Source: Macrostomum lignano
Lineage: Eukaryota
Reading direction: 5' to 3'
NCBI GenBank assembly: GCA_002269645.1
Contig: NIVC01000238.1
Coordinates: 62,001-126,000 of the forward strand
DNA length: 64,000 bases
Shown: positions 4,495 to 58,640 of the stretch, one piece after another
Layout: each line of letters starts with the position of its first letter
Numbering within the stretch: the first letter of the stretch is position 1
Notes under the pieces: model-generated
What the model was told of the DNA's origin: nothing
The model's database searches: none
What the model saw: only the letters and a program-made list of their open reading frames with translations
Program-made: the position numbers and the translations under genes

Positions 4495-5095
4495 TCACGG
4501 ACAGGTGCCAGCGGAATATGATGTGCCAGCTGAGCACGGCATCTGAACGTAGTGTCCATGATCGCAGCGCAGGTAGTGCACATCGCTGCTGCAGTCTCTC
4601 ATGAAGTCGATGGTGCAGTCCTGGCCATCTGTAAAGCAGACGGAGCTGGTGGTGGTGCTCAGGCCGGCTCCAGAGTTCGGAGGTGAAGTCGTGATGGCCA
4701 GTCTTCCTTCCACCACCTGAGTGGGTGCAACAATCAACGAAAAGGTTCTTAACAACAATGAAGGGCACTTATGGATAAGTTTGATTTTACTGGCGTATTG
4801 AGCACCGACTGACCTCGCTGACGCAGTCCAGCGGTCTCCACAGCGCCTCATGCTGAGCGGCAGTGGCCAGATAGCAAGTGCCGTCTCGCTTGAACACGGC
4901 GGTGCAGTTGGGTCGCACTGCGCACTCCACCGAGCAGGTGCGAGGGTCTCGGACTCCGTTGACCTGCGACAGGTCGGTCACGTTTCCGGGGCAACCGGAG
5001 ACGACGCGGAAGCGGACGCAGACACCGGATGCGATGGACAGCAGGCTGAGCAGGCAGGAGGCCACAGCCAGCATTCTGTGAGCTGACAGATGCAT
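4495..5095 (-). CDS. Locus A: secreted PAN/apple-like + short Thr/Ser linker + 6-Cys chitin-binding (CBM14-like) protein, ~167 aa
   Basis: Exon 1 5095 (or Met 5074)-4814: signal MLAVASCLLSLLSIASG, PAN core CSVECAVRPNCTAVFKRDGTCYL. Phase-0 intron 4813-4717 (gag|gtcagt...actcag|gtg). Exon 2 4716-4495: VVEGRLAITT...CFTDGQDCTIDFMRDCSSDVHYLRCDHGHYVQMPCSAGTSYSAGTCP*. Confidence 0.8.
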
Positions 5096-5434
5096 GGGTC
5101 TCGGTGCATTGTACTTATAAAAAGCTGCACGTACGTATTAAACAGAGAGATTTTTTGAGAATGAGCGAATGGGAGCCGACTTGAATAGCGAGCGTGTTTA
5201 GTGGCTGCTTCTTCTTTCCTGAGATGGGTCTTGACTACAGAAGCGCTTAATGCACGGGTCTTAGGCCTTCATTTCCTGTAGAAATTGTCACCGCCACGGA
5301 AATTGAAAGCACCCTGTTGTGACTCAGACATGCGGAAATTTTCAGTTGGCAAATGAGGCTGTGAATGCTTTGTAGGGAGCCAGAAGCATTACAGCCCTCT
5401 GCTTTATTGCTATGCAATTCTCACTTTAGATCCG

Positions 5435-5520
5435 CTCTCTCTCTCTCTCTCTCTCTCTCTCTCTCTCTCTCTCTCTCTCTCTCTCTCTCTCTCTCTCTTT
5501 CTCTCTCTCTCTCTCTCTCT
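5435..5520. repeat. (CT)n microsatellite
   Basis: Directly visible. Confidence 0.98.
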
Positions 5521-5907
5521 GACCATGCCTTTCAGCCATGCCTAAAGCCAGGATTTTTGGCTAAACAGCCTGTATAGCTCATTCTGTATTATTCAAAAAA
5601 CTTCCAAACTTTGCTTGATACTTTAGTTACAGTGAAAGTAATAATTACTAATGATTCACGACACAAATAATACTCGTAGTCCATGGGTTGGCGGCAGGAT
5701 ATTTCCAGCCTGTGTCACCCGATAAACTGCTAACTATATCCAGTGACCGCTAGTGCGACAGCCAAATCGGTCAATACATCCGGCGAGTTCGACTTGATTT
5801 GCACGTCATTCGATCATGCCGAAGGTCATTAGACAGTCGAGATGCAGTGAACCGCTATAGATTCTCCGAGAAAAGCTGCTAGAGGCTTTCGCTATCTTCT
5901 TGAGTTT

Positions 5908-55298: not shown

Positions 55299-56621
55299 AT
55301 GCACCTGCCACATCACAGAATGCTGTCTGTGGCCTCTTGCCTGCTCAGCCTGCTGTCCGTCGCGTCCGGAGTCTGCGTCCGCTTCCGCGTCGTCTCGGGT
55401 TGCCCCGGAAACCTGACCGACCTGTTTCGGGTTAACGGAGTTCGAGACCCTCGCGTCTGCTCTGTGGAGTGCGCAGTGCGACCCAACTGCACCGCCGTGT
55501 TCAAGCGAGACGGCACTTGCTATCTGGCCACTGCCGCTCAGTATGAGGCGCTGTGGAGACCACTGGACTGCGTCAGCGAGGTCAGTCGGTCTATCTTGCT
55601 TTGTGATTAAAAATTGTTTTTGGGTGATTTGAGGCAAATGGGGCAACATAAAAATCAAAACTGCAGACTGAGCGAATGCAAAAATTATTGGATTAAAATT
55701 TCCTAGAACAACTTGTATAAAGCAATGTCTATTAAACAAAGATAAAACTCGATACGCTTCAAGCCAATGCCGCTCTTTTTTTAGGTCGTTGAGGGTCGGC
55801 TTCTATCCACCACTACTGAGGGAAAAAGTGCTGAGACTGACTCTGTCTCCACCACTGCTCCAGCCTCAAGCACCGCCACTGCTCCAGCCTCAACCACCGC
55901 CACTGCTCCAGCCTCAACCACTGCCACTGCTCCAGCCTCAACCACTGCCACTGCTCCAGCCTCAACCACTGCCACTGCTCCAGCCTCAACCACTGCCACT
56001 GCTCCAGCCTCAAGCACCGCCACTGCTCCAGCCTCAACCACCGCCACTGCTCCAGCCTCAACCACCGCCACTGCTCCAGCCTCAACCACTGCCACTGCTC
56101 CAGCCTCAACCACTGCCACTGCTCCAGCCTCAACCACTGCCACTGCTCCAGCCTCAACCACTGCCACTGCTCCAGCCTCAACAACTGCTCCAGCCTCAAC
56201 CACCGCCACTGCTCCAGCCTCAACCACTGCTCCCGTCTCATCCACTGCGCCAGCCTCAACCACTGCTCCAGCCTCAACCACTGCTCCAGCCTTAATCACC
56301 GCCACTGCTTCAGCCCCAACCACTGCTCCAGCCTCAAGCACTGCTTCAGCCTCAACAACGGATCCAGCCCCAACCACTGCTCCAGCCTCAACCACTGCTC
56401 CAGCCTCAACCACTGCTCCAGTCTCATACACTGCTCCAGTCTCAACCACTGCTTCAGCAAGCAGCACTGCGTGCGCATCAGCAGATCAATACTGCGGGAT
56501 CGAAGGCGAATACCAGCAGCATTGCAGCAGTGATGTTCATTATATGCAATGCTCCAACTTTAAGTACATTCAGAGGCAGTGCTCTCCCGGTACAAGCTGG
56601 TCCGCTGGCACATGCCCTTGA
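55299..56621 (+). CDS. Locus I: secreted PAN + long mucin stalk + 6-Cys chitin-binding (CBM14-like) cap, ~372 aa
   Basis: Exon 1 55299 (or Met 55320)-55580. Intron 55581-55784. Exon 2 55785-56621, open in the plus frame missed by the ORF track: VVEGRLL...(ASTTATAP)n...CASADQYCGIEGEYQQHCSSDVHYMQCSNFKYIQRQCSPGTSWSAGTCP*. Confidence 0.82.
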
Positions 56622-58475
56622 CTTTCGTCGCAGACAATAAGGTTCTATGTTCGGTTGATTAGACTTTTGTTATCCGTTTTCCATTGGGTCAGTTGCATTG
56701 GGAGAATTTAATATACAGTCACCGTCGACTCAATTTCATGACTGCATAGATTGTTTAAAACGGTCAGAAATATTAAATATATGCTCGACGTAGTAGCCAT
56801 GGGAAGTCGAGTTGGTGTCGTTATATCGCATTGTTCAAAAATATGGCAACCCAATTCAATGTTGGCGAATTCGAACAACTTTTTTGACGGCTAAACAAAG
56901 TTGCTGGTAAATGAGAACTTCTGCATTTCGCTGAACCTTGAGCCGCTGTATAACGTCGTTATCTGTCGGCATTTGTAAAAATACCCATTTGCCAGCGACG
57001 AGCCGGCGGACGTCAATTACGTCAAAATGTTGCTCGAAGGAGTGAAAAATGAAAAATTACCGACCAACCTGACACAGCTTTTATGCGGAACAGAATTCTT
57101 TGGGAATTTTTGTTGGAAAATTAAAAAACTCTTATGGAGGCCATCAAAATATTTTCGCGTGAACTGGGAAATTCATTGATGCAGGAAGCTTTCAGTGAAA
57201 AAAGTGGTAAAAATGTTTCAACACTTGCCATGGCAGCAGCTTTGCTTCACTAGCTGTTGTAGTTCCCGATTGCCAAATTTCAGCTGAGGCTTCAGGCGTT
57301 CTGATTTTTCAGCCTATTGTTTCAGTTCGCTGCAGTTTGAAGGATTTCAGTGGGAGTTTTCAGCAGCATCCACGCAAACTGTCAAGTTGAATGTGTTTTC
57401 TACAATAGCATAGAACAATACAATAAATCAATCGGATGTCAATATGGTGACAACCCAATCGTGACAAGCAGCGATAATTCTACTTCTGCACACTTGTGTG
57501 TGTGTCTGTCCATATGACTAGGTACAATTCCACGCGCTTGTCTGCCTGCGCAGGGGAGTCGGCGGAATGGGAAAATGCAAGCACCCTGCTTCTAATAAAA
57601 AGCGGCCATCGATCAGAGAGATTTTTTCGTTGGCAAAGCGATTTACTTCATAGAGCACTTCATAGCTTGTTTGATTACTACCAAGAAGATATATAGTTCG
57701 TCTTTTCTGCATTGGTAAACATTTCTGCAGAGCGTCGCTTTTGTGAAATGAAATCACACTACTGCCATAAGCATGCAGACTTTGCAGCGCTTAACTCGAA
57801 CCTGACACGCAGCCTATTCAAGAAATTTTATTCTTTTCTTTGTTGCCTCCCAAGCAGATTGCTAGTTTAAAACTAAAAACTGAAAACTTTCTATCTTACT
57901 AATGCAAGGTCGGCCAACTCCGAGCTGCAAAGCTTCTCTATATCCGGCCACGACTCTTTGAAATTTCACAATAGCAATCCGGCCCGGTTCTCTGTCTTCT
58001 TTTCTTTGTTTTCCTATTTCCTCTTCTGCTTCTTCTGTTTCTGTTGTCGGGGATCCACAGTGAGAAATATGAGCTAAATGCTATTCACCATGCTGTTTGA
58101 AGATGTCCCAGGCTACATCGAGAGTTTTACTTGGATCTTAGTGACAGAACGGGGCGATATTTGGTTGAAAGTACATTCACGGATCTAAGGACGCTCTAGC
58201 TGGGACCAATTTGACCCTATCTGATATCAGATGCATGTACTTTTGAAGCTGACTTGTGTATGCATTTCTGCTGAAATGAAATCTACAGAGCACGACTCTC
58301 CGAAACTGAAATCTCCGGAACTGAAAGCATAAAGCCAAAAATCATACATCCATGCTACCAGGGAGGCACGGCTTTCAGAGCACGGAAGATAAGCATTGCT
58401 TGTTCGGATTAAACTCACTTATTAGATGATGCTCGAGTAGTGGCCGTTTCTGACGTTTTTGTTATCCACAAAGTA

Positions 58476-58640
58476 CTCATACTGAGCGGCCGTGGCCAGA
58501 TAGCAAGTGCCGTCTCGCTTGAACACGGCGGTGCAGTTGGGTCACACTGCGCACTCCACCGAGCAGGCGCGAGGGTCTCGAACCCCGTTGACCTGCGACA
58601 GGCCGGTCACGTTTCCGGGGCAACCGGAGCCGACGCAGAG
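58476..58640 (-). pseudogene. Locus J: isolated PAN-exon fragment with a nonsense mutation
   Basis: SGCPGNVTGLSQVNGVRDPRACSVECAV*PNCTAVFKRDGTCYLATAAQYE. CGA>TGA at 58542-58544; no signal peptide, donor or exon 2; lies next to the LTR. Confidence 0.8.

What the first reader, a model, noticed from the sequence alone, without database searches (positions are those of the whole stretch)
4495..58640. Modular secreted-protein cluster: constant PAN head exon plus interchangeable stalk/cap exons
At least 10 loci (A-J) over 54 kb on both strands begin with signal peptide + PAN/apple-like domain. In A, B, G, H and I the first exon ends at the same phase-0 donor (…CVSE/CNSE|gt). Each is joined to a different exon 2 opening V-V/I-x-x-R-L (pseudogene C opens VVFDS). 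Exon 2 varies in mucin-stalk length (about 20 to 290 aa) and in cap: a 6-Cys chitin-binding-like domain (A, F, I), unrelated charged tails (B, C, H), none (D), or an ALK/LTK-type Gly-rich domain (E). The exon structures are read from sequence. PAN domains are established protein/carbohydrate-binding modules. The idea that this is a diversifying mucus, adhesion, immune or reproductive bridging-protein system (constant ligand head, variable spacer, variable anchor) is inference. I do not recognise this family architecture.
Basis: partly seen in the sequence, partly recalled or inferred. Interest (0 to 1): 0.82.

Follow-up and report, generated by a model that had tools for sequence, protein, structure and literature searches.

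The report
Flatworm secreted PAN–mucin gene cluster
This is a real tandem cluster of small secreted-protein genes from the flatworm Macrostomum lignano, in which the first exon (a PAN/Apple-like head) stays about 94% identical between copies while introns, stalks and chitin-binding-like tails have diverged beyond recognition; it is a modest, lineage-specific variant of known mucin-like and lectin-like gene families.

Summary
The window is Macrostomum lignano DNA. Nine loci carry a homologous head exon: A, B, G, H and I are intact, D is divergent, F is frameshifted, and C and J are truncated. All intact copies use a phase-0 GAG|GT donor. Exon 2 opens VV/VI-x-x-RL and continues into an in-frame Ser/Thr/Ala/Pro array. 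In A, I and F it ends in a 6-Cys domain related to CBM_14/CBM_19. The junction of locus A is identical to a public gene model.

Two corrections apply. Locus E has no detectable similarity to the family head, uses phase-1 introns, and belongs to a separate, widespread PAN+ALK/LTK-GRD family. The exon 2s are not unrelated interchangeable modules. They are diverged paralogues that share their opening and their repeat unit.

The most interesting result is new. Homology is an island confined to exon 1: 94% identity and dS 0.10-0.16, against shuffled-level flanks and introns and saturated synonymous sites in the caps of the same genes. I read this as exon-limited gene conversion. Function is inferred: extracellular glycoprotein or lectin of mucus or matrix. 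No paper describing the family was found.

The parts
4495..5095 (-). Locus A. Exon 1 is 5095-4814 (signal peptide plus PAN-like head), the intron is 4813-4717, and exon 2 is 4716-4495 (VVEGRL, 25-aa stalk, 6-Cys cap, stop).
   Evidence: the product is identical to UniRef A0A1I8H776 (P0004) from Met8; the cap scores 23.4 bits on CBM_19, above the cut-off
8773..9488 (-). Locus B. Exon 1 is 9488-9222 (head ends CNSE), the intron is 251 nt, and exon 2 is 8970-8773 (VIIDRL, T/S-rich, acidic tail, no Cys).
   Evidence: the tail has no Pfam hit
32306..32753 (-). Locus C, a pseudogene. The head has a 1-nt deletion and is truncated after ...AAQ. The end of exon 1 and the intron are deleted, and the head is fused to an exon-2-like start (VVFDS).
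34586..36782 (+). Locus D. Exon 1 is 34586-34903, a divergent head about 50% identical in amino acids. The proposed intron is 34904-35912. Exon 2 is 35913-36782, a 289-aa STTAAA/STTDPA stalk with no cap.
   Evidence: the AAG|G acceptor is my own reading and is not confirmed by any public model (one search found none)
40318..41692 (+). Locus E, a neighbour and not a family member. It has three exons (40318-40690, 40793-41113, 41202-41692) and phase-1 introns. It encodes an N-terminal Cys-rich region plus an ALK/LTK glycine-rich domain.
   Evidence: 99% identical to UniRef A0A1I8GD17 with the same junctions; no similarity to the family head
43808..44378 (+). Locus F. The head is 43861-44075 with a 1-nt deletion near 43890 that causes a frameshift. 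The intron is 66 nt (44076-44141). Exon 2 is 44142-44378 (28-aa stalk, 6-Cys cap, stop) and has no VVxxRL opening.
44410..45811 (+). Orphan stalk-type 24-nt array (about 59 copies). It begins 32 nt after the stop codon of F, and the STATAPAS frame changes within it.
47632..48336 (+). Locus G. Exon 1 is 47632-47898, the intron is 84 nt, and exon 2 is 47983-48336. Exon 2 opens VVDDRL with a short stalk. The stalk frame appears to slip into the LLQPQP frame, giving a non-homologous tail.
52073..53149 (+). Locus H. Exon 1 is 52073 or 52097 to 52375, the intron is 111 nt, and exon 2 is 52487-53149 (VVDDRL, about 134-aa STTAP stalk, 86-aa Cys-free tail).
   Evidence: the tail has no Pfam hit
55299..56621 (+). 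Locus I. Exon 1 is 55299-55580, the intron is 204 nt, and exon 2 is 55785-56621 (VVEGRL, about 228-aa STATAPAS stalk, 6-Cys cap, stop).
58425..58709 (-). Locus J, a pseudogene. It is a head fragment (58658-58476) with an in-frame TGA. Homology is lost on both sides, and no exon 2 follows.

Best explanation
This is a lineage-specific tandem family of two-exon genes in Macrostomum lignano.

Anatomy (shown). Exon 1 encodes a signal peptide and a roughly 70-aa Cys-rich head most like the PAN/Apple superfamily. Exon 2 encodes a short conserved opening (VV/VI-x-x-RL) and a Ser/Thr/Ala/Pro tandem-repeat stalk of very variable length. In the ancestral form, exon 2 ends in a single C-terminal 6-Cys chitin-binding-type-2-like domain (CBM_14/CBM_19 clan).

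Evolution (shown for the pattern, inferred for the mechanism). The family evolves by duplication, repeat-number change, point divergence, and loss or decay of the cap. Exon 1 alone is kept nearly identical among eight copies, including pseudogenes. I infer non-reciprocal exchange (gene conversion) whose tracts are confined to the exon.

Function (inferred). The proteins are secreted. The stalk is O-glycosylated and acts as an extended, hydrated spacer. The head binds a protein or glycan partner. The cap, where present, anchors to chitin or another GlcNAc-rich polymer. The products would then be mucus, matrix or surface-coat components, or soluble lectin-like tethers. The tissue is unknown.
For: Organism and gene models:
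- Model A is identical to UniRef A0A1I8H776, and five more A-type M. lignano models share the same CxSE|VVEGRL junction.

Anatomy:
- Nine homologous heads.
- Canonical phase-0 GT..AG introns and open spliced frames.
- A hydrophobic N-terminus followed by A-S-G.
- Head: only PAN-clan Pfam models are hit (PAN_3 in 7 of 9 members, PAN_1 in 6 of 9, best E 3e-4), all below threshold. Cysteines C13, C32, C36, C42 and C52 are invariant.
- Cap: CBM_19 at 23.4 bits against a 20.1-bit cut-off. A cap-containing profile retrieves mollusc multi-CBM_14 proteins at library-wide E values of 4e-16 to 1e-4.
- Stalk: in-frame 18/24-nt arrays of one unit family in D, F, H and I. S+T+P+A makes up 64-93% of exon 2 in H, I and D.

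Paralogy of exon 2:
- The openings are homologous in G, H, I, A, B and C.

Exon-limited homogenisation:
- The 243-nt exon 1 core is 94% identical. The 300 nt upstream score 0.569 against 0.565 for shuffles, and introns are at shuffled level.
- Head dS is 0.10-0.16, falling to 0-0.08 in the last 36 codons.
- In the caps of the same genes A, I and F, pS is 0.76-0.84 (saturated) and dN is 0.38-0.73.
- Pseudogenes C and J keep 88-92% identity in the head.
- Five of 10 informative site pairs fail the four-gamete test.
- There is no unusual RNA structure that could explain nucleotide conservation (z = +0.63).
Against: - No transcript data could be examined here. Only the A and E junctions are backed by public gene models, and I could not check how those models were derived.
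- B-, G-, H-, I- and D-type products are absent from the protein collections searched.
- The PAN assignment is sub-threshold in Pfam. Both AlphaFold models were poor (pLDDT 47 and 59), and the fold search was meaningless.
- Caps I and F do not reach Pfam thresholds on their own.
- The gene conversion argument rests on five to eight short sequences. The four-gamete failures could be recurrent mutation.
- A recent spread of the exon by segmental copying would give the same pattern.
- The F frameshift and the G frame slip could be assembly errors.
- Whether M. lignano offers a chitin ligand is unknown to me. A paper search for Macrostomum with 'chitin synthase' found nothing relevant.
Confidence: 0.6

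Rival explanations
1. Exon shuffling. In this view a mobile 'constant head' exon has been joined to unrelated, interchangeable second exons that supply different stalks and anchors.
For: Homology between loci stops within about 10-18 nt of the donor and at the signal-peptide h-region. All junctions are phase 0, which permits swapping. The tails of B and H are unrelated to the caps. F lacks the VVxxRL opening.
Against: Exon 2 openings are homologous across A, B, C, G, H and I. Stalk repeat units are the same family in D, F, H and I. The caps of A, I and F are homologous. G and H remain alignable through the intron into exon 2, at 76.6% over about 510-545 nt. Whole genes were therefore duplicated. 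The only truly different partner, E, does not carry this head.
Confidence: 0.12
2. A decaying gene graveyard. In this view only the A type (head, short stalk, cap) is a working gene. The other copies are dead or dying duplicates, and their 'variable tails' are by-products of frameshifts and truncations in unstable repeat arrays.
For: Only A-type and P0007-type models exist in the protein collections. C and J are truncated, F is frameshifted, and the G stalk slips frame. An orphan array lies after the F stop codon. The B, G and H tails have no domain.
Against: B, H, I and D have long uninterrupted frames through highly mutable arrays: 220, 278 and 289 aa for H, I and D. Their splice sites are intact. 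I retains a complete 6-Cys cap. Repeat-rich genes are commonly missed by annotation, so absence from databases is weak evidence.
Confidence: 0.2
3. Selection only. In this view the head exon is conserved purely by strong purifying selection and codon or nucleotide-level constraint after ancient duplications, with no gene conversion.
For: Head dN/dS is below 1, at about 0.3-0.6. The C-terminal half of the head is invariant at the protein level.
Against: Synonymous sites in the head are nearly unchanged (dS 0-0.08 in the last 36 codons), while those in the cap of the same genes are saturated. Pseudogenes C and J share the same high identity. No RNA structure signal is present. Variable sites form a mosaic.
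Confidence: 0.1
4. Combinatorial transcript diversity. In this view read-through, cis-splicing or trans-splicing between same-strand neighbours (D, F, G, H, I) joins any head to any exon 2, giving a repertoire larger than the gene number. This would resemble what is reported for schistosome polymorphic mucins (own knowledge).
For: Loci D and F to I are on one strand, 3-9 kb apart. The head loci A, B, F, G, H and I share the donor phase and donor sequence, and G, H and I share near-identical acceptors.
Against: Each locus has its own stop codon and a compact intron of 66-251 nt (1009 nt in D). No transcript evidence was available. The public A-type models all join a head to an A-type exon 2.
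Confidence: 0.05

Closest known systems
Uncharacterised UniProt models of M. lignano: 'Apple domain-containing protein' and 'CBM_19 domain-containing protein' (A0A1I8H776, A0A1I8GKV4, A0A1I8HHS9, A0A1I8GNT4, A0A1I8GBE5, A0A1I8H031; more distant A0A1I8GJG2)
   Same: A0A1I8H776 is identical to spliced locus A. The others are about 90% identical and share the CxSE|VVEGRL junction. A0A1I8GJG2 (P0007) has a head 54% identical, an AVRGRL opening and a cap with no stalk.
   Different: These are automatic predictions with no function, expression or literature. The stalk-bearing members (D, H, I) and the cap-less members (B, G) have no public model.
Peritrophins, invertebrate intestinal mucins and single-ChtBD2 cuticular proteins (CPAP1)
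   Same: They are secreted and combine a 6-Cys peritrophin-A-type chitin-binding domain with Ser/Thr/Pro mucin-like stretches. The cap profile retrieves bona fide CBM_14 proteins. The family descriptions come from the abstracts of PMC7663561 and PMC3504105.
   Different: Those proteins usually have 1-16 CBDs and no PAN head. Here there is a single, divergent C-terminal CBD, closer to CBM_19 in Pfam scoring, and several members lack it. Chitin in the flatworm is not established.
[quoted passage not shown]
   Same: The logic is the same: a secreted protein with an N-terminal recognition domain and one C-terminal chitin-binding domain, encoded by polymorphic, clustered genes (abstract of PMC2632668). 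This is a 'works like' comparison only.
   Different: VCBP heads are two Ig V-type domains and there is no mucin stalk. No Ig domain is found here. There is no sequence relationship outside the CBD class.
C. elegans LET-653 (PAN domains, mucin-like linker, ZP) and CPG-1/CPG-2 (ChtBD2 plus Ser/Thr-rich glycosylated regions). This comparison is from my own knowledge and was not tested here.
   Same: They combine PAN or ChtBD2 modules with heavily glycosylated linkers in apical or eggshell extracellular matrix.
   Different: No ZP domain is present, the size and domain number differ, and no homology search here linked them.
Precursor gene families with a conserved 5' (signal) exon and a hypervariable remainder, such as conotoxins and frog antimicrobial peptides, and Schistosoma mansoni polymorphic mucins (SmPoMuc). 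This comparison is from my own knowledge.
   Same: There is a sharp contrast in evolutionary rate between a conserved N-terminal coding segment and the rest of the gene in tandem families. SmPoMucs are flatworm mucin-like VNTR proteins diversified by recombination.
   Different: Here the conserved part includes a whole folded domain, not only the signal peptide. SmPoMucs have the VNTR at the N-terminus and a conserved C-terminus. The head profile found no schistosome or other non-Macrostomum relative.
PAN plus ALK/LTK glycine-rich-domain secreted proteins (locus E only)
   Same: E matches PF12810 (32.9 bits against a 24.5-bit cut-off). Coral proteins carry PF12810 together with PF00024 (P0057, P0088, P0124). 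UniRef names the E-type models 'Apple domain-containing protein'.
   Different: This is a different gene family from A-D and F-J: a different head sequence, different intron phases and no stalk.

Membership tests
PAN/Apple superfamily (head) | A match to a PAN-clan profile at the curated threshold | tested here: inconclusive
   Only PAN-clan models are hit (PAN_3 in 7 of 9 members, PAN_1 in 6 of 9, KIAA0319_N in 6 of 9, PAN_4 in 2 of 9). All are below the gathering score. The best is PAN_1 at E 3e-4; relative P0011 scores 19.9 bits against 21.4. UniRef names the public models 'Apple domain-containing'. That is the source's own label and was not recomputed here.
PAN/Apple superfamily (head) | A conserved cysteine core (C-x3-C-x5-C-x9-C hairpin) within a domain of about 70 aa. 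The pattern is taken from my own knowledge. | tested here: met
   C13, C32, C36, C42 and C52 are invariant across 9 heads, including distant relatives.
PAN/Apple superfamily (head) | The PAN fold (a helix packed on a curved beta-sheet) | tested here: inconclusive
   The AlphaFold2 models have pLDDT 47 and 59. The best Foldseek PDB hit has E 1.8 and the hits are unrelated. The PDB sequence profile search found nothing.
Chitin-binding type 2 (CBM_14 / CBM_19) (cap) | A profile match at the curated threshold | tested here: met
   Cap A scores 23.4 bits on CBM_19 (cut-off 20.1) and 18.0 bits on CBM_14 (cut-off 22.1). Caps I and F alone are below threshold. The family profile hits mollusc proteins with 4-15 CBM_14 repeats at library-wide E values of 3.8e-16 to 8e-5.
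Chitin-binding type 2 (CBM_14 / CBM_19) (cap) | Six conserved cysteines in about 50 aa, with conserved aromatic residues | tested here: met
   Six aligned Cys and a conserved HY...C...Y/F...C..GTS...AGTCP pattern in A, I and F.
Chitin-binding type 2 (CBM_14 / CBM_19) (cap) | Binds chitin | not testable with these tools
   This needs a pull-down with recombinant cap.
Mucin-like (PTS tandem-repeat) secreted proteins (stalk) | In-frame tandem repeats rich in Ser, Thr and Pro within one exon, behind a signal peptide | tested here: met
   TRF arrays of 18/24 nt lie in D, H and I, with open frames of 289, 220 and 278 aa. S+T makes up 37-48% and S+T+P+A 64-93% of exon 2.
Mucin-like (PTS tandem-repeat) secreted proteins (stalk) | Dense O-glycosylation | not testable with these tools
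   This is inferred from composition only.
Gel-forming mucins | VWD/C8/TIL and cystine-knot domains | tested here: not met
   No such Pfam hits were found in any model.
The head family of this cluster, tested for locus E | Sequence homology of the E head to the A-J head, and the same intron phase | tested here: not met
   hhalign probability is 0.3%. The profile search gives no hit. tblastn with the E head finds only itself. The E introns are phase 1.
ALK/LTK glycine-rich domain proteins (locus E) | A PF12810 match at threshold | tested here: met
   32.9 bits against a 24.5-bit cut-off, E 8.7e-8. There are 237 relatives, including coral PAN_1+GRD proteins.
VCBP | Two N-terminal Ig V-type domains | tested here: not met
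   No Ig-family Pfam hits were found. The resemblance is in domain logic only.

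The most novel reading that the evidence does not exclude
In this reading the cluster is a diversifying recognition or tethering system. The ligand-binding head is actively held constant across paralogues by exon-confined gene conversion. 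The stalk length and the anchor are free to diversify, and neighbouring genes may be recombined at the RNA level through their identical phase-0 splice sites. That would make it a flatworm counterpart of VCBP/SmPoMuc-type polymorphic secreted effectors, acting in gut-microbe interaction, egg or adhesive coats, or sexual conflict.
Probability: 0.1. Interest if true: 0.75.

Novelty: new variant of a known kind. Interest (0 to 1): 0.42.

Why it matters
- Macrostomum lignano is a laboratory model for regeneration, bioadhesion and sexual selection. A compact, undescribed family of secreted PAN-mucin-ChtBD2 proteins gives candidate components of its mucus, gut lining, egg or adhesive secretions.
- All members could be targeted at once by RNAi or in situ probes against the shared head exon.
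- The cluster is also a clean natural example of concerted evolution confined to one exon. Head dS is about 0.1, against saturation in the last exon of the same genes. This could be used to study gene conversion tract limits and GC-biased conversion in a flatworm.
- It does not overturn anything known. The domains, mucin-type VNTRs, tandem birth-and-death evolution, and conserved 5' exons with variable remainders all have precedents.

Tried and rejected
- Structure route to confirm the PAN fold: two AlphaFold2 runs (full protein with 7 sequences; head alone with 9 sequences) gave pLDDT 47 and 59. Foldseek against the PDB returned only E>1 matches to unrelated proteins. A PDB sequence-profile search found nothing relevant. 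This route was abandoned.
P0001 and P0004 are not on record in the assembly collection. No RNA-derived contigs were obtained.
- A D-type public model to settle the D splice site: none was found.
- Hidden caps downstream of B, G and H, or extra heads elsewhere: none were found. The weak head-like hits at 392-544 and 762-1079 are chance matches or a dispersed repeat.
- RNA-level explanation for the invariant exon core: fold z = +0.63, and there is no Rfam family in the window.
- The 1141-aa ORF 3' of C as a giant stalk: rejected, because the period is 14 nt.
- The head as a universal exon module: the relative P0011 (head plus Laminin_G_3) is encoded without introns in GCA_002269645.1.
- Literature: searches combining Macrostomum with apple or PAN domain, chitin-binding, chitin synthase, peritrophin or mucin found nothing about this family. 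The seminal-fluid in situ screen paper does not mention such domains in its main text.

Full report
**Source of the window.** The spliced product of locus A retrieves a single cluster of Macrostomum lignano proteins. One member of that cluster, UniRef A0A1I8H776 ('CBM_19 domain-containing protein', 160 aa), is identical to my model of A from its second Met onward. My model of locus E is 99% identical to A0A1I8GD17. The window is therefore genomic DNA of this free-living flatworm. It also contains LTR-retrotransposon fragments and many satellites.

- tblastn with the 72-aa head finds nine copies, with E-values from 1e-19 to 3e-48.
- A profile built from the heads plus three distant relatives finds the same nine copies in the six-frame translation, and nothing else at E<0.5.
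- A, B, G, H and I are intact and 93-99% identical in amino acids.
- D is intact but only about 50% identical.
- F has a 1-nt deletion that frameshifts the head.
- C has a 1-nt deletion, has lost the end of exon 1 and the intron, and is fused to an exon-2-like start.
- J is a fragment with an in-frame stop.
- The donors are GAG|GTCAGT (A, F, G, H, I) and GAG|GTAAAC (B), all phase 0. The acceptors precede GTCGTTGA... (G, H, I), GTGGTGGAA (A) and GTCATTATC (B).
- All spliced models are open, with GT..AG introns.
- For D, I propose 34586-34903 joined to 35913-36782 through an AAG|G acceptor. This puts the 289-aa stalk in frame. No public model confirms it.

**Locus E does not belong.** Its N-terminal region has no detectable similarity to the family head. 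hhalign probability is 0.3%, the profile search gives no hit, and tblastn finds only itself. Its two introns are phase 1. It matches the ALK/LTK glycine-rich domain (PF12810, 32.9 bits) and has 237 relatives. These include many M. lignano paralogues with other N-terminal domains, and coral proteins that combine PF12810 with PAN_1. UniRef does name the E-type models 'Apple domain-containing protein'. E may therefore carry a PAN-type domain of its own, but it is a neighbour from a different and widespread family. It is not the same head with another cap.

**The protein parts.**
- Head. Pfam gives only PAN-clan hits (PAN_3, PAN_1, PAN_4, KIAA0319_N) in most members, all below the curated thresholds; the best is E 3e-4. 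Five cysteines are invariant across all relatives, with spacing C-x3-C-x5-C-x9-C. Structure prediction failed to give a usable model. 'PAN/Apple-like' is the best available label, but membership is not proven here.
- Cap. The cap of A passes the CBM_19 threshold (23.4 bits) and nearly passes CBM_14. A profile that includes the three caps retrieves mollusc proteins made of 4-15 CBM_14 repeats, with library-wide E values down to 3.8e-16. The cap is a divergent chitin-binding-type-2 domain with six Cys.
- Stalk. It is an in-frame array of one 18/24-nt unit family (STTAPA or STATAPAS). The array has about 47 copies in D, 17 in H and about 20-38 in I. It is short in A, B, F and G.
- Tails of B and H. 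They have no recognisable domain. The tail of G looks like a frame slip inside the array.

**How wide is the family?** A profile of head plus cap was scored against 1.84 billion representative proteins. Head matches came from only four clusters. Three are named as M. lignano by their sources. The four clusters are:
- the A type;
- P0007, which has head, AVRGRL and cap with no stalk;
- P0011, which has a head plus Laminin_G_3 and is a single-exon gene;
- P0016.

At the sampling available, the head is lineage-restricted. The form with head, short opening and cap looks ancestral.

**Are the second exons interchangeable modules?** The data say no.
- The first 20-60 nt of exon 2 are homologous in A, B, C, G, H and I.
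- The stalk units are one family.
- The caps of A, I and F are homologous.
- G and H are still alignable through the intron.

Whole genes were duplicated. Exon 2 then diverged by repeat expansion or contraction, substitution and loss of the cap.

**The feature I find most notable.** Between loci, similarity is an island that coincides with exon 1.
- The 243-nt core is 94% identical on average.
- The 300 nt upstream score 0.569, against 0.565 for shuffled sequences. Introns are also at shuffled level.
- Within the head, dS is 0.10-0.16 overall and 0-0.08 in the last 36 codons.
- An 88-nt stretch is almost invariant in all eight close copies, including the two truncated pseudogenes.
- In the same genes A, I and F, the cap has saturated synonymous differences (pS 0.76-0.84) and dN of 0.38-0.73.
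- Codon bias cannot explain this contrast within one gene. There is no RNA-structure signal.
- Five of ten informative site pairs fail the four-gamete test.
- The exon is a GC-rich island (64-66% GC) in 34-47% GC flanks.

The simplest reading is ongoing gene conversion confined to the exon. The conserved coding sequence would maintain the tract, because it is the only remaining homology. Recent copying of the exon alone would look the same. D (50% identical) and P0007 (54% identical) show what unhomogenised paralogues look like.

**Mechanism.**
- Shown: signal-peptide-like N-termini, a Cys-rich head, PTS arrays and a ChtBD2-like cap.
- Inferred: the proteins are secreted glycoproteins. The stalk is O-glycosylated and extended. 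The head binds a protein or glycan. The cap, when present, anchors to chitin-like polymers.
- Possible extra feature: the main-group heads have a seventh Cys just after the predicted cleavage site, which could allow disulfide-linked multimers.
- The tissue and the biological role (gut or epidermal mucus, egg or cement coats, adhesion, reproduction, defence) cannot be decided without expression data.

**Comparison with what is known.**
- The closest entries are uncharacterised UniProt predictions of the same species.
- In domain logic the family resembles peritrophins and intestinal mucins (ChtBD2 plus mucin) and the VCBPs of protochordates (recognition head plus a single C-terminal chitin-binding domain, in polymorphic clustered genes; PMC2632668).
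- In evolutionary pattern it resembles families with a conserved 5' exon and a hypervariable remainder (own knowledge).
- It is not a member of the gel-forming mucins or of the VCBPs, because their defining domains are absent.
- I found no paper on this family.

**Verdict.** This is a real, lineage-specific gene cluster assembled from known kinds of parts. The new element is the exon-limited concerted evolution. Interest is moderate.

Noticed in passing
window 29008-32142 and 32141-32291: There are 224 perfect copies (100% matches) of a 14-nt unit, GATCGTGGATCGTA. The period is not a multiple of three, so the 1141-aa 'ORF' there is an artefact of the repeat. The array abuts a 15-nt x10 array (TDTTL on the minus strand) immediately 3' of pseudogene C.
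   Followed up: partly
window 49990-51445: There are 97 copies of a 15-nt unit (DTSPT on the + strand, 88% matches) between G and H. No head exon is attached, the reading frames drift, and long ORFs appear on both strands. It may be a dead or orphan stalk of a second repeat type, or plain minisatellite.
   Followed up: partly
window 44410-45811: A 24-nt stalk-type array (about 59 copies) starts 32 nt after the stop codon of F, so it lies downstream of the cap rather than between head and cap. The STATAPAS frame changes within it. This suggests a rearrangement or a decayed neighbouring exon 2.
   Followed up: partly
window 1488-2268 and 10737-12454: Two arrays of a 23-nt satellite are exact reverse complements of one another at the consensus level. 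They bracket the minus-strand gene pair A and B. This is compatible with an inversion of that segment relative to the plus-strand genes D-I.
   Followed up: partly
window 13721-14067, 19644-20021, 23789-24553: Three arrays of the same 30-nt satellite (AAGCCTTGACATCTCAGCAATTCCCCCAGT) lie in the gene-poor 10-26 kb stretch between B and C.
   Followed up: no
window 26300-28527 (+) and 61612-63935 (-): These are LTR-retrotransposon fragments. The first has a gag-like ORF, zf-CCHC and RVT_1, and ends next to the 14-nt satellite. The second has RNase H, integrase zinc-binding and rve domains and appears to run off the window end.
   Followed up: partly
head exons, e.g. window 5020-5018 (A), 47692-47694 (G): The eight close heads have seven cysteines. 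The extra one (Cys4 of SGVCVRF, just after the predicted signal cleavage site) is absent from D, P0007, P0011 and P0016. It could be a free thiol for intermolecular disulfides.
   Followed up: no
head exons, codons for CPGN-V-T (alignment A1 columns about 218-230): The N-glycosylation sequon in the variable loop differs between the paralogues. It reads NVT (A, F, J), NLT (I) or NVS (G), and is lost as NVI (B, H, C). Thirty-one of the 35 variable sites of the exon lie in its first 126 nt.
   Followed up: partly
window 7499-8051 and 33032-33842: Long (AACT)n / (ACTA)n microsatellites lie downstream of B and upstream of C. They account for the 94% B-C match outside the head exon.
   Followed up: partly
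window 762-1079 (+) and 13049-12777 (-): A dispersed repeat is shared between these two places; the translations share LEKKWLDRFCSNLHCSIRNF...KTCFFAKVKQ. It is unrelated to the cluster genes.
   Followed up: no
L001 and L002 6001-7017 (GCA_002269645.1 contigs NIVC01003538.1 and NIVC01000193.1): The distant head relative P0011 (PAN_1-like head plus Laminin_G_3) is an intronless 338-aa gene. It is present on two contigs, next to an amino-acid permease gene, which is consistent with duplicated genome copies.
   Followed up: partly
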